From Macrostomum lignano (taxonomy: Eukaryota): a stretch of 64,000 bases of DNA. The stretch is taken from positions 1 to 64,000 of the forward strand of contig NIVC01003418.1 in the NCBI GenBank assembly GCA_002269645.1, read 5' to 3'. Each line of letters begins with the position of its first letter. The first letter of the stretch is position 1. Positions 1 through 39,477 of the stretch are shown here, in pieces. The translations under genes were made by a program, and so were the position numbers. A model generated the notes under the pieces. That model worked only from the letters and a program-made list of their open reading frames with translations, did not search any database and was not told the DNA's origin.

Positions 1-882
1 CCATTCCATATAATTATAGTCATAACATGACAGACTATTTTTACTTATAAAATGAAATCTAATAATAGAATATACTAAACCAATATTTTGAATAAAATAT
101 TATTTTGTCAAGAATATGTTTATAAAGTTTCATATAGATATCATCATTAGTATAGATGCTATTAAACCTTGAATGGCACTTATGGTCGTAACAACAGGAT
201 TTTTGACAATATAGAAACTAAAAGGTAAAAGTCTTATAACATTTTTCATTTTTGATATTTTGCAATAATTTTTTTTAATTTGACTAAGAACATCTTTAGA
301 AGTCATACTCTTTTATTAAAATATATAATCTCAAAAAGGCAACAAAGATACAAAAGAAAAGGCAGCCTTATGGTTATAACATATTTTTTTCTGTCAATTC
401 AGTAACTTTGAGGTACTATTATATTAAAAATATAATAGATTATGTGGTTGCTAATGTTTTTATCTGATGATGCAAGTACTATAATTTTATATATAGTTTT
501 TTTAACCTTCTAAAGCTTTCTATTTGTTTTTAAAAGGTACATAAACTTAATGATATCTTTTGCTTAGAAAATGTCCAATTTTTTACAAAAATAACTTTTT
601 GCCAATTGATAACATACTAATCCAACATTTTATCTTTTTTTTCTTAGATTGTATACATTACATATAAAAAAGATTTGGTAAAAAAATGGCTGATAAGGCA
701 ATGACAAGCAAAAATATTGACTTCTATTTTCCAAATATGTCCATCTTATATGGAATGGGCCTAAGAAAACAATTAGCAACTTTCTCCAAGCATAATACTT
801 CATATGCATTCCTTGGCTCAATACCCCAATATAATAAAGCTTTTTCTTACTGTCTTCAGCATTTACTTGCAGCCTCAGCACC

Positions 883-1278
883 ATGGCTAGGCCTGGAAAG
901 CAGCGGCAATGCTCTCTAGCACTCATATTGTGCACTGCAGTCTATTTAGCAGTCAGTCTGCTTGCCAAATTCGCTGACCTGCCACCCACAGTACTCGCTA
1001 CTATACTGATTGGCTACTTTTTCGTCATAACACAAATTACATTCCTTCTTACTGCCATTGACAGATGTCGAGCCAGAAATGGTGGATGGCGAGTCAGCAA
1101 ACATGTCCTGTTTGTCTGTTCCTTCTACGGAGGTGCTCTCGGGCTGATTCTAGCAATGAAATTATGTTGTCACAAGACCTCAAATGAAAAAAGATTTTAT
1201 AATCGTTCGCTAGTTTTTGTGCCACTCAATGCTATGTGGGTGCTTGTAATACAGCATTACATAATAGAAATTTATTAA
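883..1278 (+). CDS. DUF1294 (YsdA-like) small membrane protein, copy 1
   Basis: Intronless 131-aa ORF, start context gcaccATGG. DUF1294-type motifs: FLLTAIDRCRARNGGWRVSKHVL, FYGGALGLILAM, CHKTSNEKRF, plus hydrophobic helices. Confidence 0.8.
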   Translation: MARPGKQRQCSLALILCTAVYLAVSLLAKFADLPPTVLATILIGYFFVITQITFLLTAIDRCRARNGGWRVSKHVLFVCSFYGGALGLILAMKLCCHKTSNEKRFYNRSLVFVPLNAMWVLVIQHYIIEIY

Positions 1279-1330
1279 GGTTATGACACAGAGTAAATTA
1301 AAGTTTAAAATACTTTTTTATATGCATCTT

Positions 1331-1583
1331 CCCGCTGGGAAAAAATTGCAGCGACGACAGGTTGATGACAACAAGTTGACGACAAGTCACCCTGTCGTCG
1401 CCGTGGCAGTCGACCAATCGGAGGCCGATAGAAAGCTGACAGCGAAGCGCATTTGGAAGCGCGCATTTACTTGAAAAAAATCATACTTATTTTCGTAAAT
1501 CGATAGTAAATCGACAGGGCTGTCGTCTCTAGCCTGTCGTCGCCTGTCGTAACCGTGTCAGTGCTGCAATTTTTCCCAGCGGG
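1331..1583. mobile_element. MITE-like non-autonomous DNA transposon
   Basis: TIRs cccgctgggaaaaaattgcagc (1331) and gctgcaatttttcccagcggg (ending 1583); TT on both sides (possible 2-bp TSD); internal gacgac/gtcgtc repeats. Confidence 0.7.
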
Positions 1584-1914
1584 TTGTTGTTTGTATCAGC
1601 CTTTATTGAATAAAAAGCTGTTGAAACCCGCGGATTTTGAACGCGGGGAATTCCAATCCCCAGAACTATTTTTGCATGTATTCTGAAATCTGAGTCCATA
1701 CTCAAAAAAAGTTGTTAATAGTTGGTAGGATAGAGGTAAACATAAAATGGAGTACATTCGTGTAAAATTAGGATTTGAAGCAAACATTTGATATTGTTGG
1801 CTGGGGCCTGGGATGCTGCGCAGAATGTCGGGCAATGTCTGTCTGACTCTTAAAGCATGCATTGGCAAACTCTGGCCTCTGCCTCTGACTCTCCCTACGT
1901 CCTTTGGATTCTTT

Positions 1915-2467
1915 GAAACTTATATCTTCTCTTCTATTTCCTCTCTTATCTCTTGTCTCTCGTCCCTCGTCTCTCGTCTCTCTTCTCATCTCTTCCTTTT
2001 TCTTTTCTCCTCTCTCCTTACTCCCCTCTTCTCTCGTATCCTCCCTCATCTCTCTTCTTTCATCTCTCCTATCTCATCTCTTCTCTCTACTTTTCTTTCT
2101 CCATTCCTCTCCTCTCTCCTCTCTTCTCTCCCGTCTGCTCTCTCATCTCTCTTTTCTCCTCTTTTATCTCTTCTCATTTCTCTTTGCTCTCTACTCTCTT
2201 CTCTCTCCCTCTTTTCATTCCTCACTCTCCCTCTCTCAACACTTTCCTCTTCTCTCCTCTCAACTCTCTCCTATGTACCCGTACCCTCTTATCTCAACTC
2301 TTTCCTCGTTTTCTCTCTGTCCTCTCATCTCTTCTCTTCTTTCCTCTCTCCTCTCTCCCCTCTTCTCTCGTCTCTTCCCTCACCTCTCTTCTCTCTCGTC
2401 TTTGCTTTCTTATCTCTCCTTTCTCTTCTTTAATATTTTCCCTTATCTCTTCTCATTTCTCTCTGCT

Positions 2468-2511
<44 letters not shown>

Positions 2512-2560
2512 TCTCTCTCTTCTCCTCTCTACTCTCTTCCCTCTCCTTTTTTGCACTTTT
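1915..2560. repeat. CT-rich low-complexity tract with (CT)n
   Basis: Almost pure pyrimidine on the + strand; the overlapping S/L-rich ORFs are compositional artefacts. Confidence 0.95.
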
Positions 2561-2691
2561 AAGTAAGAAGACTTGAGTCTAGGAAATTTTAAGGTAGCCT
2601 AAGACATTCTCCGTAGTGAGTTTATGGTGGGTGTAAAATTTGGTTTAATTTGGTTGAGCGGTTTGGGAGTCCATAGCGATCAAATTTGTAC

Positions 2692-2692
<1 letters not shown>

Positions 2693-2760
<68 letters not shown>
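2693..2760. repeat. (CAGA)n microsatellite
   Basis: Perfect tetranucleotide run. Confidence 0.95.
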
Positions 2761-3972
2761 GTTTAGATTTTTATATGTATAGAAAAAACGACTCATTTTT
2801 TAAATCTAAAATTAGTTTGTATGATGAATTTCTGTATTCCTCTCGCTAGTATTTCTAGCCTTGCTTATATATTTGCTGACTGTTTTTTGAAAATATCTAT
2901 TTTGATGAAATTTAGCTGTCAACTTTTTACCTTTTAACAGAATTTTTTTCTTTTTTTCATTATCATAACTCAACGATATTTGAAGCATGAAAATATAAAA
3001 CTCATCTTGAAGAGAATTTTTCCATCCAAAGTAACTTTGAGCTTCACTATTCAATATTTTTGCAATGGCGCAATGGCTACTAGATATTGTTGTCATTCAA
3101 AATCTGCAGTCTTTGGTTACTGGATTTATACTTATTGTCTATCACTCTGGCGAAGTTGGCCCTGACTTGCAATTCTCCAGTCTAAGTTTCTGTATCATCA
3201 GCAGTTCAATCTGCTATTTCTAGGTTAACAGCCACATTAACACTTCCTTTCTGCAAAATTTGGCTGATTATTTATTCTCGGTGTAACCTAGAATAGATGC
3301 ACGAATTATCTCAACCTTAATTATTAAAATTTCAGTTTGTAATAAGAATTTAAAGTCCAATTAACAAACACTGTTAATGAATAGTAGACAAAAAAGTAGA
3401 CAACAATTGGCCAGTTTTTCGGGCATAACTACGAGCTACAAACTATATTAGTAACCGAAATCCTGACATTTTTACCACTAACTGTTAAATAGCAACCAGC
3501 AACTTTTTTGTTTGCTCATCTTAATTTACAGTGTATTGTAGGCTAGACGCTAATTTCATCTAGTGAACTACAAATTCCAATTCGAAATGCTAAACTACAT
3601 TTTTTCATCTAGACTACTATACTGGTTTCCTATAAAAAATGTTTTAGCAGGACGGGAAGCTATCTCATCTTCTAGGCTTCAGCATTCCAAATGAACCAAT
3701 TGTTTGTTTCGTCTGAGGTGGCACTCAAAAGTGTCTTTTCTCAACTGAATTTATCCTTAGCAAAAACCCATTTAGCGCTATACAAAATGTTCAATTTTGG
3801 CTAAATTTGTGCAGACAATAAAACTATAACCGCCAATTTTGAGTCCACCTCAAACAAAACAGATACTTACACATACTTCATTTTGTATCATTTGTTTCAC
3901 ACAAGTATTTGCGTTACTAATAAACTAACCACCCTACCTAAATTGCATGCATGCCAAGTCAGTCTACTAAGC

Positions 3973-4764
3973 ATGGCCTGCTGCCAACCCGGAACCTGCT
4001 GCCAGTGCTCCATACTCTTGATCCTGTTCACCGGAATTTTTGTCACAGTCGCTGTTTTTGCCAAGTTTGCTGGTTTGTCCCACGTTGGCCTGGCTGTTCT
4101 ACTTGGCGTCTACTTTGGCTTTCAGACACTTGTCGCATTTCTTCTGACCATGTTTGATAAATGCCAGGCAGAATCGGATGGTTGGCGTGTCACTGAACTG
4201 CTCTTGTATCTGTGCGCCTTTTACTGCGGCTTCATTGGCGTCACCGTAGCTATGATAATCTGCTGGCACAAGGTTTGCAAGCGCGAATTTGTCTTTCCCT
4301 TGTTAACTTTTGTGCCGATCAATGCTGCTTGGCTACTGATTGCTTTCTTAGTAGTTCCTATCAGTCTTCCCAGCTCTCTGTTCGTGACCAATGCTACAAA
4401 TGCTATCAATGCTACTGCTCTCCTTGACAATGCTACAAATGCTATCAATGCTACTGCTCTCCTTGACAATGCTAAAAATGCTGTTCATCATATCAATGCT
4501 ACTGCTCTCTTTGACAATGCTATCAATGCTACTGCTCTCCTTGACAATGCTACAAATGCTATCAATGCTACTGCTCTCCTTGACAATGCTACAAATGCTG
4601 TTCATCATATCAATGCTACTGCTCTCTTTGACAATGCTACAAATGCTGTTCATCATATCAATGCTACTGCTCTCTTTGACAATGCTACAAATGCTGTTCA
4701 TCATATCAATGCTACTGGTGTCCTTGGCAGCCTAGTTGCTCACATTTTCCCCACCGCCGGATAG
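3973..4764 (+). CDS. DUF1294-like membrane protein, copy 2, with long N-A-T repeat tail
   Basis: Conserved start ctactaagcATGgcctgctgc shared with copies 3 and 4. MACCQPGTCCQC N-terminus, DKCQAESDGWRVTE and CWHKVCK motifs, repetitive NATNAINATALLD tail, TAG ending at 4764. Confidence 0.8.
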   Translation: MACCQPGTCCQCSILLILFTGIFVTVAVFAKFAGLSHVGLAVLLGVYFGFQTLVAFLLTMFDKCQAESDGWRVTELLLYLCAFYCGFIGVTVAMIICWHKVCKREFVFPLLTFVPINAAWLLIAFLVVPISLPSSLFVTNATNAINATALLDNATNAINATALLDNAKNAVHHINATALFDNAINATALLDNATNAINATALLDNATNAVHHINATALFDNATNAVHHINATALFDNATNAVHHINATGVLGSLVAHIFPTAG

Positions 4765-5409
4765 AAGGAGACATTAACCTTGAACTGATAGTGCCAAATT
4801 TCATGTGTTTCAACTCGAGTTGGAAAGTTTTATTGCAGCAACTTTACAGCTGAATTTTACTATTTAATGTCAAATTATTCGATCAAGCTTACCTGTTTAC
4901 ACAATTTACTGTATGCTACTTCAACATCGACTGATCCGAATAAATCCAATAATGTTTGATGTTTTGGAAAATTTTAGTATCATTACATAACAAATCTGTT
5001 ATAAAAATGTTTTATAATTTTTTTAATTTAGGTTTTTTTTAAGCATACGGATTTTGTGCTCTCAAAAAAGCTACGTTTGAACTTAAATGTCTTTTTCTGA
5101 AGCTTTACGCAAACCCTAATTATTATACGCTTGGCTCATATCTTCTTACTCTAATCTTTAAATTCACAAACTGTTTTGAGTCTGATTTCTTTTATTTCAC
5201 ATTAATAGCCTATTAGTAATAAGCTAGCAATCTAGTGCCCCCTTCCGGGCGCCCAATAAGCAAGGAACAAAAATTATTCATGCAAATCCATTAAGAAGCA
5301 TGAATCAATTCCTTCTTCAGTTTTATAAATCACCTTATTCGAGTAAAATTGTCACGGAGAATGATATTTGCTATGAATATCTTTTTTTCTTAAAGTAACA
5401 AAGATAACA

Positions 5410-6005
5410 GGCATTCTCCCTAGCAAGCATCCTCCAGATAGCAAGCATCCCCCCAAATACAATTGCAAGCATCCCCACAAGTAGCAAGCACCCCCCCCCC
5501 CCAAATACAATAGCGAGCATCCCCCCAGATAGCAAGCACCCCCCAAAAACAATAGCGAGCATCCCCCAGATAGCAAGCACCCCCCAAAAACAATAGCGAG
5601 CATCCCCCAGATAGCAAGCACCCCCAAAAACAATAGCGAGCATCCCCCAGATAGCAAGCACCCCCCAGAAACAATAGCGAGCATCCCCCAGATAGCAAGC
5701 ATCCCCCCCAATACAATAGCAAGCACCCCTCAATACAATAGCAAGCACCCCCCAAATACAATAGCAAGCATCCCCCCAATACAATAGCAAGTATCCCCCA
5801 AATACAATAGCAAGCATCCCCCCAATACAATAGCAAGCACCCCCCAAATACAATAGCGAACATCCCCCAGATAGCAAGCATCCCCGAAATACAATAGCAA
5901 GCATCCCCCAAATACAATAGCAAGCATCCCCCAAATACAATAGCAAGCATCCCCCAGATAGCAAGCATCCCCCAAATACAATAGCAAGCATCCCCCCAGA
6001 TAGGA
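5410..6005. repeat. ATAGCAAGCATCCCCC-type minisatellite
   Basis: Degenerate tandem units atagcaagcatcccccagat/aaatacaatag; same family as 32575-33110. Confidence 0.9.
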
Positions 6006-7557
6006 AGCAAGAGTAGGTCTGTACTGAATACAAAATACCGAAATACTCTTAATATCCCGCCCATGTTTGTAACAAGCCGTAACTGTGACAAGAATCGCAA
6101 AAAACTCACGACACTAGTGACTCTAGCGACTCTGGGATAACTCTTCTCACTTGTTAGCGTCTTAAAACTACTGCAATGCGACAGAGACTAACTAGCTGTA
6201 TTTATAACAGTTAAATAGAGCTGTTATAAATGCGAAATGTGTGCGATTATTTTTCATAAAGTGACGCTGATGCGCTTTTGACGCAACTCAGTGATTCTAC
6301 AGCGACTGTGGCACACCTCAGATGAGACTCAACGGCCCCAGAGCCATTATACCTACAGAAGCGCCCCAGAGTCGCAGACAATTAAAAACCGCTTAAGTTT
6401 ACTCTTGAATTTTACCGTGACATCTTGTCCTCTTAGAGTCGCCTAGAGTCACTTATTTCCTATTCTACCTGTTTTACCTGCAACGACTCTGGGACACTTC
6501 TTGGCCTAAGTATACGCAGATGTACGAGCTATTCGGACATTCTTGGCCACTCACTGTCATCTTACAACCGGCCACTTTTTCGTCTACTTTCAGTTTACAG
6601 TGTAACTAGTTCAGACTAGACGCCAAGTGCTTTTGATTCTCTATAAAAATTTCTTAGTGAGACAGCAAGTTCTCTGCTTTGTTGTTAAACGGGATTGGAA
6701 TTCGGGGCAACCCGCGGATCAGCCCAGAGAAGGGCTCTGCCGCTGGATTTTGTAGGGGGCCCTACTACCAAGGGCTGAAGCCCGAGAGGCCCAGATTGGG
6801 ACCAGAACTCAAGGCCTGGTAAAGCCTTATTGGATGCTACTACGAGCATCGTAACCCAAGCCTATAGACTAAGACACCGCCAACCCACAGTGCCACAAGG
6901 GCATTTCACTACCCGGCTCTAATAAGCTTGGAATATCTGAGTAGCGGTCCGAGAGCGGAAAGACCCGAGTCTACGGAAAAGGCTAAGTTATTGGAGCGAG
7001 TCTGGACAGCTTATTGCGATGGGCGAGTCTCCCATCAGGTGGCCAAGAACCTCTCCTATAGGGCTGCGAGCCTCAAAGCTTTTTCAGTATCCAGCTCTAA
7101 TAAGCCCAGGCCAAGGGGTTGGTGAGGAGCACAAGGAGCAAAGGGACCACCGGACTCAGCCGGTTTTCCCCGATTCGGGACGAACTCATTCTTCAGGACA
7201 CCAATCCACTGAGAGTGATGGGAGCCGAGACACAAGAAGCATAAATTCAAAGACTGAATGGCTACAAGGCCGGGATAAAACACAAAGCTAAAAGTGTGTA
7301 TTTCGTTTAAGGTAGCACCCATAAGTGTCAGTTTTCTTAACCAAATTTGTTTATAGCAGAACTTCCATTTAGTGCTATACAAAATAGTCATTTTTGGCTA
7401 AATTTGTGCAGAAAGTAAAACTATAGCGACCAATTTTGAGTGCAGCTCAAACAAAACAGATACTTACTTCATTTTGTGTCATTTGTTTCATACCAGTACT
7501 TGCTTTACTAATAATTTGCGGCCCTACTGAAATTCCAGCAAAATCTGTCTACTAAGC

Positions 7558-8097
7558 ATGGCCTGCTGCAAACCCGGAACCTGCTGCCAGTGCTCCATAC
7601 TCTTGGCCCTGTTCACCGGAGTTTTTGTCACAGTCGCTGTTTTTGCCAAGTTCGCTGGTTTGTCCCACAATGAGCTGGCTGTTCTACTTGGCGTCTACTT
7701 TGGCTTTCAGACGCTTCTCGCATTTATCCTCACTTCCATTGATAAATGCCAGGCACAATCGGGAGGGTGGCGTGTTGCAAAAGCGGCCTTGTATCTGTGC
7801 GCATTTTACTGCGGCTTCCTTGGCGTCATCTTAGCCATGCTAATTTGCTGGCACAAGGTTAAAAAGTGCGAATTCGTCACCTGTTTGCTAATTTTTGTGC
7901 CGATCAATGCTGCTTGGCTACTGATTGCTTTCTTAGTAGTTCCGATCGGTCTTCCTGGCTCTCTGGTCATGACCAATGCTACAAATGCTACAGATGCTAT
8001 CAATGCTACTGCTCTCCTTGACAATGCTGAAAATGCTGTACATCATATCAATGCTTCTGGTGTCCTATTTGCTCACATTTTCCCCGCCGCCGGATAG
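7558..8097 (+). CDS. DUF1294-like membrane protein, copy 3
   Basis: 179-aa ORF, close paralog of copy 2 (DKCQAQSGGWRVAK, CWHKVKK) with a short NAT tail. Confidence 0.85.
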   Translation: MACCKPGTCCQCSILLALFTGVFVTVAVFAKFAGLSHNELAVLLGVYFGFQTLLAFILTSIDKCQAQSGGWRVAKAALYLCAFYCGFLGVILAMLICWHKVKKCEFVTCLLIFVPINAAWLLIAFLVVPIGLPGSLVMTNATNATDAINATALLDNAENAVHHINASGVLFAHIFPAAG

Positions 8098-8181
8098 AAA
8101 GAGACATTAACTTTGAATTGATAGTTTCAACTCGAGTTGAAAATTTTTTTGAAAAATTGAAAAAAAAATTACCATGTTTGT

Positions 8182-8341
8182 GCGCAACCTTGGGATTCAC
8201 CCGGCCGTTTCTATTGGCAACACACACATGTATGTCGCTATTGGACAGAATAGTAGTCACGTGACTGCTCTCAGCCAATAGCGACTTACATGTGTGTGTG
8301 TGTTGCCAATAGAAACGGCCGAGTGATTCCCAAGGTTGCGC
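8182..8341. mobile_element. 160-bp foldback (palindromic MITE-like) insertion
   Basis: Arms gcgcaaccttgggattcacccggccgtttctattggcaacacacacatgta and its near-perfect reverse complement around a central gtcacgtgac; absent from the matching 3' flank of copy 2. Confidence 0.8.
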
Positions 8342-9629
8342 GCGTATTTTAGTTTAACCTATTTACAAAATTTACTGTATGCTGCTTCAACATCGACTGA
8401 TCCGAATAAATCCAATAATGTTTAATGTTTTGGACGATTTTAGAATCTTTACATAACAAGTGTTTGTTACAAAATAGTTTAATTCTTTTTAAAATTTGGA
8501 TCCTATTTTAAGCATACGGATTTTGTGTTCTCAAAAAAGCTACGTTTGAACTTTAATGTCTGTTAAGATTTACGCAAACCCTAATTAATATACGCTTGGC
8601 TCGTATCTTCTGTACTCTAATATTTGAATACACAAAAATGTTTTGACTCTGATTATTTTTATTCAATATATTGATAGCCTTTTGGTAATAAGAGTAGCTC
8701 TGGACTTGGAATACAAAATTATTCATAATTTCCCGCCCATATTTTTAACAAGCCGTAACGGTGATAAAAATCACAATTCACTAGTGACTCTAGCGACTCT
8801 GGGACAACTCTTGTCACTTGGTAACGTCTCAAACGACTGCAATGCGATGGAGAGGCGACTGTTGAGGGCAACTTGAGGCACAAACGCGAAAAAGCTATCC
8901 AAGAGTCGTGAGCGCTTAACTGCACGCCTCAGATAAGACTCTACGTCTCCAGAGTCGTTATACATGCAGAAGCGCGCCAGAGTCGTTTCAGAGTCGCAGA
9001 CAATAAAACGCCTCAAGTTGACTCTCGACTTTTACTGTGACATCTGGTCCTTTTAGAGTCGTCTAGAGTCACTTCCTTCCAATTTCACCTGTGTTACCTG
9101 CAACGAGTCAACGACTCTGGGACGCTTCTTGGCCTAAGTATTCAGACGTACGCGCTATTCGGACATTCTTGGCCACTCACTGTGAACTGACAACCGGCCA
9201 CTTTTGGTCTACTTTTAATTTACAGTGTAGCTAGTTTAAACAAGACGCTAAGTTCTTTTGGTTCCCTATTAAAATGCCGTAGTAAGATGGGAATTTCTCT
9301 GCTTTTAGCACTAAATTCCCAATACGAGCGTATCTCATTTTCCAGACTTCGTAGTTCCAAATGAAGCAAAGGTGTGTGTTCCGTTTGAGGTAGCACCCAT
9401 AAATGTATCTTTCGTAATTTGTTTATAGCAAACTCAATTTAGTGCTTTATACAAAATGGTCGATTTTGGCTATAAATACATGCAGAAAATGCAACTATAA
9501 GCACAAATTCGAGTCCAACCTCAAACAAAACCAATGCTTGCTTCATTTAGTATCATTTGTTACTATATAATTTCTTTACTAATAAAGTACGGCCCTACTG
9601 AAATTCCAGTTCCAGTCAGTCTACTAAGC

Positions 9630-10142
9630 ATGGCCTGCTGCAAACCCGGAACCTGCTGCCAGTGCTCCATACTCGTGGCCCTGTTCACCGGAATTTTCGT
9701 CACAGTTGCTGTTGTTGGCAAGTTTGCTGGTTTGTCACACAATGAGCTGGCCATTCTACTTGGTGTCTACTTTGGCTTTCAGACACTTTTCACATTTATC
9801 CTCACTTTCATTGATAAATCTCAGTCGGAATCGGGAGGTTGGCGCGTTGCAGAAGCGGCCCTGTATCTGTGCGCCTTTTACTGCGGCTTCCTCGGCATCA
9901 TCTTAGCTATGATAATTTGCTGTCACAAGGTTAGAAAGGGCGAGTTTATCATCTGCTTGCTAATTTTTGTGCCGATCAATGCTGCTTGGCTACTGATTGC
10001 TTTCTTAGTAGTTCCAATCGGTCTTCCCGGCTCACTGGTCATGACGAATGCTACAAATGCTACCAATGCTACTGCTCTCATTGATAGCCTATTCGTTCAC
10101 ATTCTCCGTCCGGCCGGATGGAATGAGACAACCTTGAATTGA
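9630..10142 (+). CDS. DUF1294-like membrane protein, copy 4
   Basis: Start chosen at the conserved ctactaagcATGgcc (9630) rather than the upstream 9534. DKSQSESGGWRVAE and CCHKVRK motifs; NATNATNAT tail. Confidence 0.85.
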   Translation: MACCKPGTCCQCSILVALFTGIFVTVAVVGKFAGLSHNELAILLGVYFGFQTLFTFILTFIDKSQSESGGWRVAEAALYLCAFYCGFLGIILAMIICCHKVRKGEFIICLLIFVPINAAWLLIAFLVVPIGLPGSLVMTNATNATNATALIDSLFVHILRPAGWNETTLN

Positions 10143-11461
10143 TGATGTCAGTAGGTAACTTGGGTTAGAAAGTTTTTGAGACAATTTTACGGTGGAATCA
10201 TTCGAGCAAATTTACCTATTTAAGCGGAATATACTGTTTACCATTTCGATTTTTCACTATTCTAATCGATTTGAAAGGAATAAATTTTAAATCTTCAAGT
10301 ATTTATTCTTATGTCGTTTTTTGGTAAAGTTGAATTGATTTTGGCTCATTTTAAGCGTATGGTGTATGGTGCAAGGATAATACTTTACTTGAGCTTTTTA
10401 TCTTTAAGAAAATATATATAGTATTAAAACAATTACCGGTAATCTGTTAATCCTTGAATAGTCAAAAATGTTTTGATTCTGACTTTGTTTTGGTTTAATA
10501 AAATTGATAGCTTATCTTATTGCTAATTAAGAGTAGCTCTAGGACTTCTAGTAACAAGTCCGTTGACACGTTGAACGTTACCGTGACAAAAATCGCTAGA
10601 GTTATTTGCAAAAATTGCATTCATTGCATTGACTCTTGTGACCTTTTAACGTCTCAAACGACTGTAGTGCGACGGAGAGGCGACTGTTCAGTCACGAGCG
10701 CATCACGCGTGAGTTGTAGAATTGTAAAAGTCGCGGAAAAAGTCGCCCAATAGTCGTGTTAGCGCTTGAAGTTTTACTGCCTCAAGTAGACTAAATAGAG
10801 TTGTTATAAGTGCAAAATGAGATTCTGATTCATTAAGTGAATATGCAGTGATTCTGCAGCGACTCTACCACGCCTCAGATACGACTCTACGGTCCCAGAG
10901 TCATTATAAAAGCTCCCAGCGTCGTTTCAATAAGTCGCAAACAATAAACATCTCAAATTGATTAACAGGCCACTCTGACGACTTTTACAGTGACATCACG
11001 TCCTAGAGTAGTCTAGAGTCACTTCTTTTCCAATTTAACCTGTGTTACCTGCAGCGACTCTGGGACACTTCTTGGCCTAGGTACCGTTTCCATCGGGTAG
11101 TAAAAGACTTCAACAGTTACTAGGCACTGAATTGCTTATCAATAAAGTGTTTGAGTCCCGACTATTAGACTAGCCGGTGTGTACATGCCCCACGATCAGA
11201 AGGGACCTTTTCATTAAGACTGCAAATCCAAAACAGCGAGCTCTGTTGCTTTTATCCATTAAATTAGCCCCGTCTTGGTTTCTTTTCTACTAGCTTCACC
11301 TCTCGAGAGAAACCTCGCGGTCGGCTTGATATATTAAAGGTGTAAGGACTCCACAGTGGCTCAATATGTAGCAGTTTTCCAGTCGTTAGTTACCCAGTTT
11401 TTTTTGGCTAGATTAGTTGATTGATGCAGTATTTCTGATCTGACTCGCATGCTTCAGCATA

Positions 11462-11884
11462 ATGCCGCAACCTGCACGACGAGACAACACACTCCAAGGC
11501 TTGATTGGTCCCGGCAGTTACCGTCAGGCACAACAGGCCGTCTGGCCATGCGCTGCAGTTTACGTTGCAGTTGCCCTGTATGGAAGATATGCCAATCTAT
11601 CGCGCATCGACCTCGCTATTTTCATGGCTGCCTACCTAATCCTAAATAATGTGTTCACCTTTGGTTTGGTTGCCTACGATAAATATCGAGCTAGAAACGG
11701 CGGGTGGCGTATTGCCGACGCTGCGTTATTAATCTGCGCCTTCTTTTGCGGCATTTTCGGCCTGATTCTTGCCATGATTGTTTTGCGTCATAAAAACAGA
11801 AGGAAGTATTTTTATTATGGCTCGTTTCTTTTAGTTCCAGGCAATGCGTTGTGGCTTTTGCTGTACTTTATAGTTTGGATGTAA
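11462..11884 (+). CDS. DUF1294 (YsdA-like) membrane protein, copy 5
   Basis: 140-aa ORF with the most canonical motif set: NNVFTFGLVAYDKYRARNGGWRIADAAL...GLILAMIVLRHKNRRKYF. Confidence 0.85.
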   Translation: MPQPARRDNTLQGLIGPGSYRQAQQAVWPCAAVYVAVALYGRYANLSRIDLAIFMAAYLILNNVFTFGLVAYDKYRARNGGWRIADAALLICAFFCGIFGLILAMIVLRHKNRRKYFYYGSFLLVPGNALWLLLYFIVWM

Positions 11885-13439
11885 TAAATAGCATTAAGCT
11901 GGTGGTACTAACGACTGCAAGGTATCAGGTTGCCACCTGTCATGCGGGTCTACCGGCGTCAGAGAATCCGGGAGAATCACGTGACTGGCGTTTTTTCTCA
12001 TTTTTGTCTGGCCACCGATTGCATGATCGGCTTCTTTCCAAGCGAGACGATATTTTGACCGTTGCCCCTAGATGTGTATTCGTCTTAATTCTAATAGTCT
12101 CTGGGTTTTTCCATTTGCACTCTCTTCCTCAGATAATAAAAGACTAGATATTACTCTGCACTGAGTTAAGCCATTTTTTGTGTCATAGTCTATGGCTCAA
12201 AAAAAGTGTCTACTCTTTGGGCGAGCGTCGGCGTGCGCATGGCAAGAAAAATTGCTAGTTGCTCCAAAAATGAATTTTGACGCAAGGCACTGCTGTGCCT
12301 ACGGGTGCACGTTGATTGTTGTTTATTACCGCGCATACTTATAGCAGAGAATGCTTCCCTTCTACCTGAAACTGTTGTCATATTTTGCTTATACATGAAA
12401 CTGCTGTCAGCAGTCGAATGCTGGAGCTGTTGTCATGCATGTGTTTTGCTTATAAATGAAACAGTTATCAACCTGTTGTTGAAGCTCCAACTCTTAAGCC
12501 CTCAAGTTCCTTCGTTTTGACCATAATGGGAGTGCACTCAACTTTGATGTTTTGAAAGCTTACATGTATGGGTGATTTCGTGATTAAGCTGACACGAAAA
12601 TGACAATACATCACTTTTGCTACCTATTTTTAGATCGTTTGACACATCCATGTTCGTTCACGCTACTAACCAAAGAGTAGTTGCAAAAATCTAAACAAGA
12701 GTGAACTATCTAGGGTTATAGTATCTGTGCTCTCTTCTTCATCCCCGATCTAATATGTATATGCATGTTGATTTTGGACTTCGCGTTGCTAAACCTCTCT
12801 GTAATGATTTTGTATCGAAATGGGATGATTTATGACGACATCGTCTCACAACCAGTATGCACTGAGGCGATTCTGCCACTCATTCCGCTGAAGCTCGATC
12901 CTGAGAACATAAAAGCGCGTCAATACTGTACGCAGACATGCTCACACAGGGTGTTGCCCCCTTGGTGCTGGCGCCCTTGGATACTGCAAACAAATGATTA
13001 CTCGTTTTGTATGTATGAGTATTAAAGTGACACTGAAAAAACTGGAGGATCTTAATATGGTACGCTCATATTTTCTACACAGCTCTCATTTTTACCTAAT
13101 CAATCCACTTCAAGCAACTAAGCAACAGGTATTCTTTTCTGTTGCCTGTTATGTACGCGGTAGTTGCATCAGATTAAAAATTAAAAGTGAAAATTTAAAA
13201 TGAAACGTATTTATACAGTGAAAGAAATTTGTCGTCTCCTTCCTTGCGTCTAGTCCTCGCTTTCCTCTACTCTTCTTTTTTTCTTCTTGGTTTTCTACTA
13301 GCTATAGACTACTGAATTTGACTCTAGGTCAGTCAAACAAGGGATATCACATCCATGGCCAAGCCAATGAATGCAGCCCTCAGCCACTCTGTCGACCAAA
13401 TAAATGAATCCATGGGGGTGATACCATATACGTATTCCC

Positions 13440-13662
13440 CAGTTGGTCGCGGCCATAGACTACAGAAACGTATTTATATCAAGTTGGTCGCGGCCATAGA
13501 CTAGATAAACGTATTTATATCAAGTTGGTCGCGGCCATAGACTAGAGAAACGTATTTATTCCCCAGCTGGTCGCGGCCATAGACTACAGAAACGTATTTA
13601 TTCCCCAGCTGGTCGCGGCCATAGACTACAGAAACGTATTTATTCACCAGTTAGTCGCGGCC
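13440..13662. repeat. ~40-bp tandem repeat containing CCATAGAC
   Basis: About 5.5 copies of agytggtcgcggccatagactacagaaacgtatttat(tcccc/atca). Confidence 0.9.
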
Positions 13663-15536
13663 ACGGTAAATGAAACAAAGCAGGAAATCGCTTATATTCA
13701 ATATTAAACTGAGCACAATCGGCAGCTTTTATTTGCGTAAAATGAAGGCTGTATTAACGATTAGTAGATATCCAACTTAATAAACACGTTTATTGATTGT
13801 TCTCGTATAGAAAAACAATTTATTCAATATAAATATATAATATATTATTTTGAATGTCTAAAAGCATGCTACAGGAAACGTCGGTATTAGTGTTTTTTGT
13901 AACTTTCGGAGTGCTTGCACGGGTGTCGGGTGGATACACGACAAAACAAATTTTAGCTAAGTAATTATAGCTAGCCAGAGAGCCAGAGTCTAATTAATGA
14001 AAGCGAACATAAAGCAAAGGTTATCGTTGCGAGGATTTGTAGCGATATGTTTGGTAACTAAGCTATTCTGAATAGAAAAAAAACAATGTGCATCGCGAAG
14101 AGCATTTATAGCATCCTTGTATCGGACTCAACGGAGTAGTGTCTAGCAGAAACAGTGAAAGTTGAAAAAATCGACCTCTGTCTCGCAAATATTGCAGCCG
14201 ATCGCCACCTACTTAAAAAAAAAACTAAACCATTCCGAAAAGCAGAACTTTTCTTTTCAAATAGAACGCGAATTAATTCACTTACAGTAGTACTAATCAG
14301 TAGTGACAAGGCGGTGCAACAGCGGCGCAACATTGGTCAACTTTATCGCGAACAGTCGATATTAAAAAATCAACACAGGTACCTTCTTCAGTACAATTGC
14401 AAGCTTAAACATGTAAACAAACACACACACACACACCAGCACAAGTTGCAAGCCTGAGAAGGGACTGGTCTAACGAAAGACTGTACGCAACTGAGCTCAA
14501 AGAAATGCTGCGCTTTGTATTGGATCTCCGTGTTGTTTAGACGGACGTAGTATTGGTATTCTTCATTATTTTAATGACTCGATGATTTATAAATGGAAGT
14601 GGCACTTCACACTTCTCAGAGCTCAGTCCGCACTTTTTAAAACACTTTTGTCTTCAATTAGCTGGTCATCTTGTGGAATGCAACAACCCTTGAATTCCGA
14701 TAGCTGGAGGTCGTTTTGATGAATTCTATTTATGGTTTATGACAGTGCGTGTTGAGGAACTGCTAAATATTCTATGTTTATATATAGTAGAATGTTGTTT
14801 ATAATAAATACTTAACAACAGGAGATATGGGGGCAGCTGGGCGAAGGGCAAGGCACAAGCTGAAAAGCGAGCCAATACTGCTGAATGATACGAGTTAGTC
14901 AAAAGTATATCAAAGGTTTCACAAACAATTGAAAAAAATTAGATAGATTTTTGTTAAAACTGCAGTTTCTCAAAATTAACTTCACTAACAAGCTTATCTG
15001 TTGCTAGTGTGTTCATGGGTTTGAAATAATTCACGTCTAAAGGTTTAGCGTATTAAAATGTGGGTCGTTAGGATTGATTTGAACTTTAAAAAACATAATT
15101 CGAAAAAGTTCTGCAACCATGCAGAAGCGTAAGTATGTGCCAGAAATGTGTGCAAAAGCAAATTCTCGTAAGTTAGACAACAACCACAAAAATAGGCTTA
15201 CAATTAACAGGTTGTGCTGCTCAAAAAAGGATAATTCCCGGAGTGCTAAATGAGCGTATGTACTTTGCTAGCCAGATGATAATAAGCGATAAAAAAGCAA
15301 CAATATGCTCTGCTGAAAATCTGCATGATATCGGGCCAAGGATCATAGGGATGTGTTAGCCACGGTGATGGTGGTCGATCAATCAAATCTATTAGTAAAA
15401 CTTGTCTTGCAAAATGAGTTGATAAATATTGAATGCGTTGCATAGTCTAGTAAATTTCTCTTTGGAAGAAACTATTCGTCCTCCCAATATGTTTTTGAGT
15501 TACTGCCGAAAAACAATATTTGCACAACCATCCTAT

Positions 15537-15615
15537 GGGGTTGTAGCCTATTGGTATATAGCGTACGACTCACGACTGAAAGGTCGGGGGTTCGATTCTC
15601 GACTCAACACCCGGA
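15537..15615 (+). mobile_element. tRNA-like SINE head (family 2), fragment
   Basis: ggggttgtagccta..ggt (A box) and ggttcgattc (B box); matches the heads of the elements at 28547-28756 and 44785-45067. Confidence 0.55.
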
Positions 15616-15777
15616 ACGATTTGTGTCCTTGTGTCCAATAGGGGTAGTTGTAATCGCTTATTTATTATTTATTAGTTATTATCCTATCCCAAAAATAGTC
15701 GTTAAATTAAACTAGCTAATAAAATTCTGCAGAACATTTCCCAACACCCCAATTGCAGATCGATATGGTGAAGCCGC

Positions 15778-17420
<1,643 letters not shown>

Positions 17421-18621
17421 AGCTAGCTAAGGAGAGTCAGTTCCTTACAATGAATGACGTCGCCAACAATGGAATCCTAGAGCGAAGGTTTGTGCAGCGG
17501 GTGCAGGCAAGAGCAGAGATATCAAAAACTTATGACGGCGATCGTGTGAAGGAAGTGGAGGTAACCAGAAATCGGCCACCAGAACGTTTCTTTTATCCCA
17601 AAAGTCGCTTTAGGCAGTCCGCTTTCCACCAACCCCCCCCCCTTCCTAGTCCACTCGACCGCTCTGCGGGGCAGACCTAAAAAGTGATTCAACAGATCCC
17701 TGAAAGGGCTGCGCAGAACTTTGCATGTAATTGCCCGACCGGCGCACCTCCGCATCTGTAGGGGAGGGGGTGGGTGAGGGAAGGGATTCGACCCAGCACG
17801 CATTAGGAAATGTCGACTGCGAACTGCACCGGCTATACCTGGTCCATGGCATTCCGCAACTTCGAAATGGCAGGCCCAGAATTCAAGACAGGGATGGAGA
17901 GGCGCCGGCACCGCACATCCCGTTCCCAATCGATGATGGCGCTCTGCAGCCTCTTTTCTATCGATCGGATTCGCCATCTTTCGGCATTCCCTTCTCCCTG
18001 TACCCCAGGGGCTCGCGGCTTGCTTACCTGGGCGCAAGATCGGTGGAAAGGTTACCGGGAACTGCGCGCGCGAGCCCTCTGCCCGAATTTTTCCTCCCTG
18101 CAGAGAGACACACTCGACGCGCGAAAACTATATGGGACGATTAGTCAGCATTTGTATGTGATGCAGCAGCGCGTTGGGGGATTTTCCACCACTTCGTTTC
18201 GTTCATCGTCTACTGCAATCTATCTCTTTTCTCTTCCCGTGCAGTCTGCTGTTCCGGAAGCAGAAAATTTCAGGGAAGAAAATGTATAGAGAAGTTACAA
18301 GCCATGTGTTTCTGTTTTACAGGGTTCGAAAAGCAGTTGACATTTATCGGGATTTGGGCTGACCTTGTGTGCATTTCGTGTAGAAAAGGTTTGCCTGGCG
18401 ATATGCAAATAACAATCTAGCTAGGTCACTTTCCATTCCCAAGCTATACCTGATTTTTTTGTCTTCTGTAAAGCTTCAAGTGAGAATGACTCGAACTGCA
18501 GTAAAGTCTCTATTTTAGGAAAATTTAATCATTTTGCAACTTGATTTACTAAAATACGAGTAGTTATCGTCTATTATTTATTCTATTGTACTCGTAGCCT
18601 TACAATTCCCTTTTCAGATTA

Positions 18622-19429: not shown

Positions 19430-20140
19430 TCAGACCAAATAGAACTTGACCCAGTCCGCGCTCGTCTCGATCTCCGCCTCCACCTGAGCGTCGGTGAACA
19501 GCAGCAGGCGGCAGGCTCTCAGCTTGCTGTTGTACAGCACGTGTCTGCAGCTGGCGTCACTCATAGCGGCTGCAACGCACTCAACAGCGCTGCTCACATT
19601 CGGCACATCGATGAAGCAGTACTCGGTGTTGTAGATGGCTCTCTTGAACGACACCTTCCATTTGGCGAACCTCAGATCCGCAGAGGGATGTGTGTACTCG
19701 CAAGCGTATCCATAGTTACGGTTGCAACTGGTGTCTCTGAGCAGTCCAAGTTCGTTCATCCGAATGCAGTTTTCATCAGCACCTCCTGATGGTTCGCTTG
19801 TGCGAAACAGACTTTCAGGACTGGCGATGCCGTTTCCGTTGACCCTCTGCCAGCCGTCTCTCTTCTTGCCTCTTTCATCGGCCAGGTCGCTCAGTCCGAG
19901 CCACAGCTGGCAGCTGCAGGATGAGCTGATGCCGCTGCGATTCAGTGCCTGGATGAAGCTCTGCGAGTTGACGAGCTCACCTCCGATCGATGCGCACTGC
20001 CGATTGGCTGAGCACCAGCTGTGGCTGTGAGCTGTGCTCACGAACAGGCACAGACCGGCCTGCTGCATGGTGAACGGTGCGGGACACGGCAGGGTCTGCG
20101 ACTGCAGCAGCTGGCAGCTCAGCAGCAGCAGCAGCAGCAT
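19430..20140 (-). CDS. Secreted C-type lectin + PAN/Apple-like protein, copy C1 (EPS motif)
   Basis: Poly-Leu signal peptide; CTLD (WCSANRQCASIGGELV, LWLGLSD, EPS, ENC, C..NYGYACE); C-terminal YC..ECVAAAM...CRHVLYN...CRLL; intronless. Confidence 0.85.
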   Translation of the reverse strand: MLLLLLLSCQLLQSQTLPCPAPFTMQQAGLCLFVSTAHSHSWCSANRQCASIGGELVNSQSFIQALNRSGISSSCSCQLWLGLSDLADERGKKRDGWQRVNGNGIASPESLFRTSEPSGGADENCIRMNELGLLRDTSCNRNYGYACEYTHPSADLRFAKWKVSFKRAIYNTEYCFIDVPNVSSAVECVAAAMSDASCRHVLYNSKLRACRLLLFTDAQVEAEIETSADWVKFYLV

Positions 20141-32555: not shown

Positions 32556-32574
32556 TTAGTATGAAGAAGATTCA

Positions 32575-33530: not shown

Positions 33531-34272
<742 letters not shown>

Positions 34273-39434: not shown

Positions 39435-39435
<1 letters not shown>

Positions 39436-39477
<42 letters not shown>

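What the first reader, a model, noticed from the sequence alone, without database searches (positions are those of the whole stretch)
883..11884. Five-copy tandem array of intronless DUF1294/YsdA-like membrane genes in an animal genome
Seen: five same-strand ORFs (883, 3973, 7558, 9630, 11462) share the F..DK..A...GWR(V/I)...L...(G/C)G..G...AM....HK motif. Copies 2-4 sit in duplicated units with homologous flanks; copies 1 and 5 are divergent and compact. Known: DUF1294 is a family of unknown function best known from bacteria. Inference: a lineage-specific expansion of an uncharacterised membrane protein, possibly of horizontal origin because all copies lack introns, now diversifying. The canonical GG..G is CG..G in copies 2-5.
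Basis: partly seen in the sequence, partly recalled or inferred. Interest (0 to 1): 0.72.

Follow-up and report, generated by a model that had tools for sequence, protein, structure and literature searches.

The report
Flatworm tandem array of DUF1294 genes
The window comes from the flatworm Macrostomum lignano and holds a real five-gene tandem cluster of small membrane-protein genes from the mostly bacterial DUF1294/YsdA family; it is a local gene-family expansion of moderate interest, and a bacterial (horizontal) origin is neither shown nor excluded.

Summary
Five same-strand ORFs (883, 3973, 7558, 9630, 11462) all pass Pfam DUF1294 (49-67 bits, cut-off 25), and the window holds no further copies. 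The source is Macrostomum lignano: the copy 4 ORF is identical to an NCBI protein whose cluster mates are named M. lignano proteins. The same array in the same order lies on three other contigs of assembly GCA_002269645.1, so it is not contamination, and copies 2-4 (76-86% aa identity) are not assembly duplicates. The window's own contig is a mosaic of two haplotype/subgenome types. Copy 3 is clearly under purifying selection, and copies 4 and 5 show low ratios based on few changes. Copies 1 and 2 cannot be told from neutral drift. Copy 5 is deleted on one contig. Only copy-3 and copy-4 types have RNA-seq-based GenBank models; these start right after a splice-acceptor-like site. All M. lignano DUF1294 genes, including a dispersed paralogue inside a spliced gene, form one clade. 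Their sister in the best tree is a jellyfish-type group, but support is only 11.5%. Recent horizontal transfer is therefore not supported, and an ancient one cannot be excluded. The protein is a confidently modelled four-helix membrane bundle with no solved structural relative; its biochemical function remains unknown.

The parts
883..1278 (+). Copy 1: DUF1294 gene, 131 aa, four TM helices, keeps GG..G; no C-terminal tail
   Evidence: ORF; Pfam 55.9 bits. dN/dS is 2.2 against the L001 homeologue, not significantly different from neutral (p=0.24). No protein model for it in the 15-billion-protein collection.
3973..4764 (+). Copy 2: DUF1294 gene, 263 aa, Cys-rich N-terminus MACCQPGTCCQC, long repeat tail rich in N-x-T sequons
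   Evidence: ORF; Pfam 48.8 bits. 14 sequons, all in the C-terminal tail. The tail differs in length between contigs: 263, 221 and 195 aa. dN/dS 0.59.
4389..4726 (+). In-frame coding minisatellite (39/48/117-nt periods) that makes the copy 2 tail (units such as NATALLDNATNAI)
   Evidence: Tandem Repeats Finder rows at 4389-4695, 4399-4647 and 4521-4726; a shorter relative lies at 7974-8066 in copy 3.
7558..8097 (+). Copy 3: DUF1294 gene, 179 aa, Cys-rich N-terminus, tail with 4 sequons
   Evidence: ORF; Pfam 53.9 bits. dN/dS is 0.23 against L001, significantly below neutral (p=0.0002). The copy-3 type has a GenBank model on another contig (P0166, BOX15_Mlig029919g1).
9630..10142 (+). Copy 4: DUF1294 gene, 170 aa; the annotated GenBank model starts at 9612 (PVSLLSM...)
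   Evidence: The ORF from 9612 is identical to P0152 (NCBI; contig of 73,757 bp). It differs by 1 aa from PAA94398.1 and by 3 aa from PAA54048.1/PAA64538.1 of M. lignano. Pfam 56.1 bits.
9604..9609 (+). TTCCAG splice-acceptor-like site; the annotated mRNA model of copy 4 begins 2 nt downstream
   Evidence: A YAG ends 20 nt before the ATG, and the model starts 18 nt before the ATG. GenBank gene boundaries were set from SL trans-splice reads (PMC5730564).
11462..11884 (+). Copy 5: DUF1294 gene, 140 aa, the most canonical copy (66.9 bits), longer polar N-terminus, no tail
   Evidence: ORF; Pfam. Identical to the L001 copy. dN/dS 0.30 against L004. Deleted on L003 apart from a 15-aa remnant. AlphaFold2 model with pLDDT 82.9. 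No protein model for it in the collection.
3661..7257 (+). Duplicated unit holding copy 2 (approximate limits); enlarged relative to unit 3 by a 23/41/87-nt minisatellite at 5421-6009
   Evidence: Direct-repeat families D4, D6-D13, the upstream alignment and tandem repeats.
7258..9329 (+). Duplicated unit holding copy 3 (approximate limits)
9330..10691 (+). Duplicated unit holding copy 4 (approximate limits; homology to unit 3 ends near 10691)
   Evidence: Family D14, 8807-8866 = 10632-10691; upstream alignment.

Best explanation
This is a five-gene, head-to-tail array of DUF1294/YsdA-family genes in the nuclear genome of the flatworm Macrostomum lignano. Shown: all five encode roughly 130-aa cores that fold as a four-helix membrane bundle, made of an extra N-terminal helix plus the three-helix DUF1294 core. 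The array arose by local tandem duplication within the flatworm lineage; copies 2-4 are the youngest and were duplicated as 2-3.6-kb units with their flanks. The whole array predates the split between the haplotype/subgenome types of this polyploid, because the same five genes lie in the same order on the divergent type. Inferred: at least copies 3 and 4 are expressed and are matured at a splice acceptor about 20 nt before the ATG, most likely by spliced-leader trans-splicing, possibly from one precursor transcript. Copies 2-4 have gained a Cys-rich N-terminus and a C-terminal tail made of an in-frame minisatellite full of N-glycosylation sequons. This tail changes length by repeat slippage. 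Charge balance and sequon position suggest an N-out/C-out topology: the tail, the N-terminus and the conserved DK...WR motif face the outside or lumen, and the HK(x)KK loop faces the cytosol. Constraint is uneven: copy 3 is clearly conserved, copies 4 and 5 show low ratios from few changes, copies 1 and 2 are loosely constrained or drifting, and copy 5 is lost on one contig. The family has been in the flatworm genome for a long time; a recent bacterial transfer is unlikely and the deep origin is unresolved. The biochemical activity is unknown. My best guess is a small surface or secretory-pathway membrane glycoprotein whose conserved charged motif sits at the outer membrane interface, but this is a weak inference.
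For: Family: Pfam PF06961 at 49-67 bits. Organism. Collinear arrays on NIVC01000010.1, NIVC01001742.1 and NIVC01002978.1. Eukaryotic setting: C-type lectin/PAN, GST and piggyBac genes in the window and an intron-containing EF-hand gene downstream on the other contigs. Duplicated units. Single flatworm clade at 59% bootstrap with copies 2-4 at 100%; the P0003 profile hits the array copies first. Selection. Expression and processing: RNA-seq-based GenBank models for the copy-3 and copy-4 types start 2 nt after TTCCAG (annotation method in PMC5730564). Structure: AlphaFold2 pLDDT 82.9, pTM 0.73, helices 17-43, 48-78, 86-108 (kinked at the invariant Gly97) and 115-139. Topology indicators and sequons. 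Tail repeat. Long residence: the paralogue is the last exon of a spliced gene, and no hit outside M. lignano exceeds 85 bits among 1.84 billion representatives.
Against: No RNA-seq reads were examined here. Expression of copies 1, 2 and 5 is unknown, and no GenBank protein matching them was found in the collection. The 'one precursor' idea rests on a shared name prefix, which can also come from clustering at 95% identity. The topology is inferred from charges and sequons only, and the charge balance of copy 1 points the other way. dN/dS for copies 1 and 2 is compatible with neutral evolution, so they may be decaying. The window's contig is a mosaic of two types and could be a chimeric assembly path. 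No functional evidence exists for any DUF1294 protein.
Confidence: 0.75

Rival explanations
1. Recent horizontal transfer: a bacterial ysdA-like gene entered the Macrostomum lineage and was then amplified in tandem.
For: The family is overwhelmingly prokaryotic: about 5,200 hits, and the named ones are mostly bacterial. The coding sequences of all five array genes are uninterrupted. The distribution in animals is sparse. A jellyfish-type profile does not rank the flatworm copies above bacterial sequences. GC3 of the array genes (0.39-0.52) is lower than that of the neighbouring lectin and GST genes (0.68-0.81).
Against: No hit outside M. lignano scores above 85 bits, and core identity to any bacterial protein is at most about 45-54% over about 60-90 aa. 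The closest paralogue is part of a spliced multi-exon gene. Host-type acceptor sites and RNA-seq-based models are present. The best tree puts the flatworm clade next to cnidarian-type genes and not inside a bacterial clade, though with weak support. The low GC3 matches the low GC of the surrounding intergenic DNA (0.38-0.43). The array predates the divergence of the subgenome types.
Confidence: 0.12
2. Old animal gene: the four-helix DUF1294 form was present in early animals and is shared with Cnidaria. It was lost in most lineages and expanded only in Macrostomum.
For: Jellyfish (Rhopilema esculentum) proteins and two eukaryote-like contigs have the same four-helix layout and a Cys-rich N-terminus with a C-x-x-[PL]G-x-x-x-Q-like motif. 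They are sister to the flatworm clade in the best NJ tree. An HMM of the flatworm N-terminus ranks P0006 first of 86 targets. DUF1294 is counted in Hydra, Clytia, Aurelia and Morbakka (PMC7642931).
Against: Bootstrap for flatworm plus cnidarian-type is only 11.5%. The N-terminal match is marginal (8 bits, E=0.01 in 86 sequences) and the jellyfish proteins themselves are not among the top hits. An extra N-terminal helix also occurs in bacterial members. The reciprocal profile test is not supportive. No relatives from other animal phyla were recovered.
Confidence: 0.4
3. Partly decaying array: only copies 3-5 are functional, and copies 1 and 2 are unexpressed or drifting relics whose reading frames are still open by chance.
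For: Between haplotype types, copy 1 has 21.8 nonsynonymous against 3.2 synonymous differences and copy 2 has 17 against 9; neither differs from neutral. Copy 1 changes near-invariant residues (DK to DR, E to K). No protein matching copy 1, 2 or 5 was found in the collection. Whole genes are lost or broken on some contigs: copy 5 on L003 and a copy 3 frameshift on L004.
Against: Both ORFs are intact on every contig examined despite 7-13% nucleotide divergence. Copy 1 against copy 5 still gives dN/dS 0.27 over the long term, although dS is saturated. Models overlapping repeats were filtered out of the GenBank submission (PMC5730564), which could explain the missing copy 2 model. The L004 frameshift may be a long-read assembly error.
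Confidence: 0.3
4. Artefact: bacterial contamination or mis-assembly created the apparent array.
For: 36% of the Mlig_3_7 assembly length lies in chimeric scaffolds (PMC10733133), and the window is a mosaic of two contig types.
Against: Four contigs carry the array between eukaryotic genes and repeats. The paralogues differ by 14-57% in protein sequence. The mosaic switches between two versions of the same five-gene locus and does not create copies.
Confidence: 0.02

Closest known systems
Bacterial YsdA / DUF1294 (Pfam PF06961, COG3326), e.g. Bacillus subtilis YsdA
   Same: The Pfam domain is above threshold. The invariant D, R and G and the DK...R...GG..G...HK..K..F pattern are shared, as is the three-helix membrane core. 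Function is unknown in both.
   Different: The flatworm proteins have an extra N-terminal helix, and copies 2-4 also have a Cys-rich N-terminus and a sequon-rich repeat tail. The RIPE motif is R(V/I)xx, HKT is HKV or HKN in copies 2-5, and the first G of GG is C in copies 2-5. The bacterial genes are single and some are co-transcribed with infC-rpmI-rplT (PMC1865079), whereas these form a five-gene eukaryotic array.
Cnidarian-type DUF1294 proteins (Rhopilema esculentum EP00795 P015546 and P000698; relatives P0052 and P0006 on large eukaryote-like contigs)
   Same: Four-helix layout, a Cys-rich N-terminus starting MC..., an uninterrupted roughly 130-aa coding sequence, and sister position in the best tree.
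   Different: Only 26-35% identical to the flatworm copies. They keep GG and HKT. There is one copy per 20-kb locus and no repeat tail. The relationship lacks statistical support.
Second M. lignano DUF1294 family (PAA49980.1 / P0003; contig NIVC01003746.1)
   Same: Same species, the closest relative of the array genes by profile search and tree, the same four-helix layout and the VP.NA.W motif in the last helix.
   Different: About 35% identical. The WR motif is degenerate (SYRV) with a 6-aa insertion after DR. It is the last exon of a spliced gene with no ATG of its own, lies downstream of a Peptidase_C97 (PPPDE) gene to which one UniRef model fuses it, and shows no second DUF1294 gene in the stretch of its contig that was examined.
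Cold-shock-domain-DUF1294 fusion proteins of Proteobacteria
   Same: The same C-terminal membrane domain (PMC7404187; PMC1865079).
   Different: They have an N-terminal nucleic-acid-binding CSD (PF00313), which the flatworm proteins lack.
Dictyostelium DUF1294 gene DDB_G0285825 (listed as a candidate horizontal transfer)
   Same: A eukaryotic member of a mainly bacterial family for which a horizontal origin has been proposed (PMC3188802).
   Different: It is a single gene in an amoebozoan. It was not compared by sequence here because it was not retrieved.

Membership tests
DUF1294 / YsdA (Pfam PF06961) | Match to the Pfam model above its gathering score (25 bits) | tested here: met
   55.9, 48.8, 53.9, 56.1 and 66.9 bits for copies 1-5, covering 50-55 of the 55 model positions.
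DUF1294 / YsdA (Pfam PF06961) | Invariant residues of the family: D of DK, R of the (W)R motif, second G of GG..G | tested here: met
   D73, R83 and G97 (copy 5 numbering) are invariant in 113 sequences including all five copies.
DUF1294 / YsdA (Pfam PF06961) | Near-invariant residues (at least 90%, not strictly defining): K74, A77, E86, G96, G100, H110, K111, T112, F117 | tested here: inconclusive
   H, K, F and G100 are kept in all copies. K74 is R in copy 1; A77 is S in copy 4. G96 is C in copies 2-5. E86 is K in copies 1 and 3 and D in copy 5. T112 is V in copies 2-4 and N in copy 5. This points to functional divergence, not exclusion from the family.
DUF1294 / YsdA (Pfam PF06961) | Three-helix integral-membrane core | tested here: met
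   AlphaFold2 helices 48-78, 86-108 and 115-139 plus an extra helix 17-43; hydropathy scan.
Spliced-leader trans-spliced gene or polycistronic unit of M. lignano | An acceptor site at the 5' end of the mature mRNA | tested here: met
   The copy 4 model starts 2 nt after TTCCAG. All five copies have a YAG within 4-23 nt of the ATG.
Spliced-leader trans-spliced gene or polycistronic unit of M. lignano | RNA-seq reads carrying the spliced leader joined at that site | not testable with these tools
   No read data are available here. The GenBank boundaries were derived from such reads according to PMC5730564.
Spliced-leader trans-spliced gene or polycistronic unit of M. lignano | Several genes cut from one transcriptional unit | tested here: inconclusive
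   The copy-3 and copy-4 types are named Mlig029919g1 and g3 on one contig. The prefix can also reflect clustering at 95% identity, although their coding sequences are only about 87% identical.
Horizontally acquired bacterial gene in an animal | Physically integrated in the host genome, not contamination | tested here: met
   Four contigs carry it between host genes and repeats.
Horizontally acquired bacterial gene in an animal | Nested with support inside a bacterial clade | tested here: not met
   The flatworm clade is sister to cnidarian-type genes in the best NJ tree, and no supported bacterial sister exists; deep nodes have 0-12% bootstrap. The method (NJ on 89 columns) is weak, so this lowers the claim but does not exclude an ancient transfer.
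Horizontally acquired bacterial gene in an animal | Absent from related animals | tested here: inconclusive
   Present in a jellyfish and counted in five medusozoans (PMC7642931). No other phyla were recovered, but the searched collections hold few animal proteomes. Other flatworm genomes could not be searched.
Horizontally acquired bacterial gene in an animal | No spliceosomal introns | tested here: inconclusive
   The array coding sequences are uninterrupted. Their 5' ends lie at acceptor sites, and the sister paralogue is a spliced exon.

The most novel reading that the evidence does not exclude
The array could belong to an animal-specific branch of DUF1294, shared by flatworms and medusozoan cnidarians and descended from one ancient bacterium-to-eukaryote transfer. 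In Macrostomum this branch would have been turned into a family of N-glycosylated cell-surface proteins, transcribed as a polycistronic, spliced-leader-resolved gene cluster, and evolving fast through repeat slippage and relaxed or positive selection. That pattern is typical of genes at an environmental, microbial or reproductive interface.
Probability: 0.15. Interest if true: 0.55.

Novelty: new member of a known kind. Interest (0 to 1): 0.33.

Why it matters
DUF1294/YsdA is a very large family (about 5,200 representative clusters at E<=0.001 in the exhaustive search). It has no known function and no solved structure. M. lignano is an animal model with transgenesis (PMC5730564), and RNA interference is also in use for it to my knowledge (not checked here). 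It carries at least six distinct members, some clearly under selection, so it offers a eukaryotic system in which localisation, glycosylation and loss-of-function phenotypes can be tested. The locus also illustrates how tandem arrays behave in a recent polyploid. Divergence between the copies of this locus is 9-13% over copies 1-3, against about 2% genome-wide. There is also copy loss, repeat-length change and a mosaic contig. For genome annotation, three of the five genes (copies 1, 2 and 5) appear to lack a GenBank protein model. The finding does not change what is known about gene transfer into animals, because the origin remains unresolved.

Tried and rejected
- A word-indexed search with copy 5 alone found nothing, not even itself. 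This only showed that copy 5 is unannotated.
- NCBIfam has no model for the family; only chance hits appeared.
- Rfam found nothing in the window.
- A PDB sequence search gave only chance-level hits (best E=0.049, to Lgt). Foldseek against the PDB gave nothing (best E=2.8, TM-score at most 0.37). There is therefore no structural analogy to lean on.
- Bacterial gene neighbourhoods in Caulobacter and Curvibacter are unrelated to each other. Only the known Bacillales infC-rpmI-rplT-ysdA arrangement recurs, so no function can be drawn from context.
- I considered the extra N-terminal helix as a shared derived character of the animal genes. I rejected it because 36 of 275 homologues, several of bacterial type, have two hydrophobic segments before the DK motif.
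- I tried a reciprocal profile test. The jellyfish-type profile does not prefer the flatworm copies.
- The apparent positive selection on copy 1 (dN/dS 2.2) is not significant (p=0.24).
- A literature search for the locus tags found no paper.
- The last large search, with the cnidarian-type profile, found no further named animal relatives.

Full report
**1. Observation**

Each passes the Pfam DUF1294 (PF06961) gathering score of 25, with 48.8-66.9 bits over nearly the whole 55-position model. NCBIfam has no model for the family. tblastn with each copy finds exactly five places in the 64-kb window and no fragments. The five proteins share 32 invariant columns, including the D(K/R)...GWR(V/I)...G..G...AM...HK motif.

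Copies 2-4 are 76-86% identical to one another, and copies 1 and 5 are about 43% identical to everything else. Copies 2-4 lie in repeated units. These share 300 nt at 87-90% identity across the gene start, about 300 nt of conserved upstream DNA and several downstream blocks. The copy 2 unit is enlarged by a 23/41/87-nt minisatellite at 5421-6009. The GG to CG change in copies 2-5 is real. It affects a position that is Gly in at least 90% of 113 homologues.

**2. Source organism and reality of the array**

An exhaustive HMM search of 1.84 billion representative proteins gave about 5,200 hits at E<=0.001 but only one close cluster (244 bits). The next best hit scored 85 bits. The close cluster is Macrostomum lignano. 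The copy 4 ORF, read from 9612, is identical to an NCBI protein on a 73,757-bp contig. Its cluster mates are PAA94398.1 (1 difference) and PAA54048.1/PAA64538.1 (3 differences).

The rest of the window is plainly metazoan. It holds six single-ORF C-type-lectin/PAN genes, a GST exon, a piggyBac-type transposase and retroelement fragments.

Three other contigs of assembly GCA_002269645.1 carry the same genes in the same order:
- NIVC01000010.1 (L001) has all five genes intact.
- NIVC01001742.1 (L003) has copies 1-4, but copy 5 is deleted down to a 15-aa remnant.
- NIVC01002978.1 (L004) starts inside the array. It has a frameshifted copy 3 plus copies 4 and 5.

An intron-containing EF-hand gene follows the array on these contigs.

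A 500-nt tiling comparison shows that the window is a mosaic:
- Positions 1-9,500 are about 100% identical to L003 and 74-97% identical to L001.
- Positions 9,500-12,500 are 99-100% identical to L001 and 83-95% identical to, or absent from, L003 and L004.
- Beyond 12,500 all contigs converge.

This fits the published picture of three homeologous subgenomes (S, L1, L2) with about 2% SNP divergence and 36% of assembly length in chimeric scaffolds (PMC10733133). The array is therefore neither contamination nor an artefact of collapsing or expansion, and copies 2-4 are true paralogues. The window's contig is either a recombinant haplotype or a haplotype-switched assembly path. The divergence between the two types over copies 1-3 (87-91% identity) is several times the genome-wide figure.

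**3. Selection and turnover**

Nei-Gojobori estimates between the two types:

| Copy | dN/dS | Differences |
|---|---|---|
| 1 | 2.2 | 21.8 nonsynonymous, 3.2 synonymous |
| 2 | 0.59 | 17 nonsynonymous, 9 synonymous |
| 3 | 0.23 | 13 nonsynonymous, 17 synonymous |
| 4 | 0.3-0.5 | very few |
| 5 | 0.30 | 6 nonsynonymous, 6 synonymous |

Against the neutral expectation, only copy 3 departs significantly (p=0.0002). Copies 1 and 2 do not (p=0.24 and 0.25). Among paralogues, copy 3 against copy 4 gives 0.26, and copy 2 against copy 3 or 4 gives 0.54-0.60.

The copy 2 tail is 263, 221 or 195 aa long on different contigs. It is encoded by an in-frame 39/48/117-nt minisatellite.

The array is thus a mix of constrained genes (copy 3 clearly, copies 4 and 5 probably), loosely constrained genes (copies 1 and 2) and outright loss (copy 5 on one contig).

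**4. Gene structure and expression**

GenBank models exist for the copy-3 and copy-4 types only: Mlig029919g1 and g3 on L001, Mlig010953g2 on L003/L004, and P0152 on the window's contig. Copies 1, 2 and 5 are absent from the 15-billion-protein collection.

According to the genome paper, the GenBank annotation derives from RNA-seq. Gene boundaries were set by mapped spliced-leader reads and poly(A) sites, and non-coding or repeat-overlapping transcripts were removed (PMC5730564). The copy 4 and L001 copy 3 models start as 'PVSLLSM...', 18 nt before the ATG and 2 nt after a TTCCAG acceptor-like site. All five genes have a YAG within 4-23 nt of their ATG.

I infer that copies 3 and 4 are expressed and processed at that acceptor, most likely by SL trans-splicing. 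The shared name prefix suggests one precursor transcript, but prefixes can also reflect clustering at 95% identity, so that point is open. 'Intronless' is therefore correct only for the coding sequences.

**5. The protein**

An AlphaFold2 model of copy 5, built with a 113-sequence alignment, is confident (mean pLDDT 82.9, pTM 0.73). It has four helices: 17-43, 48-78, 86-108 (kinked at the invariant Gly97) and 115-139. The PDB holds no sequence or fold relative.

In copies 2-5 the side carrying loop 1 and the HK loop is more positive than the side carrying the N-terminus, the DK...WR loop and the C-terminus. All 4-14 N-x-S/T sequons of copies 2-4 lie in the C-terminal tail. This suggests an N-out/C-out topology with a glycosylated outward-facing tail and a cytosolic HK(x)KK loop. 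It agrees with a cytoplasmic N-terminal cold-shock domain in the three-helix bacterial fusions. It is an inference only, and the charge balance of copy 1 disagrees.

Evidence on function for the family as a whole is thin:
- ysdA is co-transcribed, as a minor read-through product, with infC-rpmI-rplT in B. subtilis. The same gene order occurs in another Bacillales genome (PMC1865079).
- Many proteobacterial members are fused to a cold-shock domain (PMC7404187).
- One transposon mutant in a Pseudomonas syringae DUF1294 gene resisted a phage whose other resistance loci are LPS genes (PMC7216180).
- Other bacterial neighbourhoods are not conserved.

I therefore commit only to 'small polytopic membrane protein, in copies 2-4 probably a surface or secretory-pathway glycoprotein', with low confidence in any activity.

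**6. Origin**

The family is mostly prokaryotic, but it is already recorded in eukaryotes. It is a candidate horizontal transfer in Dictyostelium (PMC3188802). It is also a counted Pfam domain in medusozoan cnidarians: Hydra viridissima 5, H. vulgaris 1, and columns I read as Clytia 1, Aurelia 1 and Morbakka 2, with none in Nematostella or Acropora (PMC7642931).

Here, the only full-length relatives of the flatworm proteins are two Rhopilema esculentum (jellyfish) proteins and two proteins on large, gene-sparse contigs from metagenome assemblies. They have the same four-helix layout, a Cys-rich N-terminus and uninterrupted coding sequences, and each locus holds a single copy. Fungal (chytrid) and euglenid members also exist.

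A second M. lignano family (P0003; PAA49980.1) is the closest relative of the array genes. It is the last exon of a spliced gene. It starts right after a canonical acceptor and has no ATG of its own, and the upstream exon joined to it in a UniRef model ends at a GT donor. A Peptidase_C97 gene lies upstream.

In neighbour-joining trees on 89 core columns:
- All M. lignano genes form one clade (59% bootstrap), with copies 2-4 at 100%.
- The cnidarian-type genes form a clade (87%).
- The two are sisters in the best tree, but with only 11.5% support.

A jellyfish-type profile does not rank the flatworm copies above bacterial ones. The N-terminal similarity is marginal, and an extra N-terminal helix also occurs in bacterial members.

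My conclusions on origin are as follows. The expansion is specific to the flatworm lineage and the genes are long-resident. A recent bacterial transfer is unlikely. Whether the family reached animals vertically or by one or more old transfers cannot be decided with these data.

**7. Verdict**

The argument for a horizontal origin is not supported as stated. The finding is a new, undescribed member of a known kind: DUF1294 genes in a eukaryote, here as a tandem array, with two of the five genes already annotated as hypothetical proteins. Interest is moderate.

Noticed in passing
window 19430-20185 (-), 30438-31163, 40980-41696, 45897-46586, 48397-49140, 60670-61383 (+): A second tandem family: six single-ORF genes of about 230-250 aa. 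Most begin with a signal-peptide-like N-terminus. The three copies scanned match a C-type lectin domain (24-31 bits), and one also has a weak C-terminal PAN/apple match. GC3 is 0.72-0.81 in the five copies measured, much higher than in the DUF1294 genes.
   Followed up: partly
L015 (NIVC01003746.1) 3886-4563, 5812-5844, 8001-8540: The dispersed M. lignano DUF1294 paralogue (P0003) has no start codon of its own. It begins at a canonical AG acceptor, and a UniRef model joins it to an upstream exon ending at a GT donor, downstream of a Peptidase_C97 (PPPDE/DUF862) gene. It may be a PPPDE-DUF1294 fusion protein or a mis-merged model.
   Followed up: partly
window 1-17000 compared with L001, L003 and L004: The window's contig switches from about 100% identity with NIVC01001742.1 (1-9500) to 99-100% identity with NIVC01000010.1 (9500-12500). 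This is either a recombinant haplotype or a chimeric assembly path. Divergence between the two types over copies 1-3 (9-13%) is far above the published genome-wide figure of about 2%.
   Followed up: partly
L003 about 11116-11484; L004 1509-2054: Copy 5 is deleted on NIVC01001742.1, leaving a 15-aa remnant. Copy 3 on NIVC01002978.1 has a frameshifted N-terminus, and its GenBank model is cut to 134 aa. The frameshift could be a long-read indel error.
   Followed up: partly
window 52314-53539 (+): A piggyBac-type transposase (DDE_Tnp_1_7) split over two overlapping ORFs, so probably frameshifted and inactive. It is followed by a GC-rich coding-like repeat at 53181-54070.
   Followed up: no
window 26510-26944 (-): An exon encoding a glutathione S-transferase N-terminal domain (GST_N, 34 bits). 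The rest of the gene was not traced.
   Followed up: no
window 37850-38641 (+), 45266-45811 (-): Retroelement remnants: an RNase H / RVT_3 ORF and a weak integrase-core fragment.
   Followed up: no
window 5421-6009 and 32474-33147: Two related minisatellites, the first with a 23-nt unit; both read 'GMLAIWG...' on the minus strand. One lies inside the copy 2 unit and the other about 27 kb away. The window is also very rich in other micro- and minisatellites (e.g. 1928-2547, 16662-17185, 33508-34384, 35227-36297, 39349-40206, 62249-62813).
   Followed up: no
window about 15700-17800 (-), by collinearity with L001 18193-20267: An intron-containing EF-hand (AIF-1-like) gene lies downstream of the array on the other contigs. 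By collinearity it should lie here, with the (TCTA)n-type repeat at 16662-17185 in an intron. It was not checked directly in the window.
   Followed up: no
window 883-11884 compared with 19430-61383: The DUF1294 genes have GC3 of 0.39-0.52 and sit in a stretch with GC of 0.35-0.46. The lectin and GST genes have GC3 of 0.68-0.81 in DNA with GC of 0.45-0.53. This is a sharp compositional step inside one 64-kb window and remains unexplained.
   Followed up: partly
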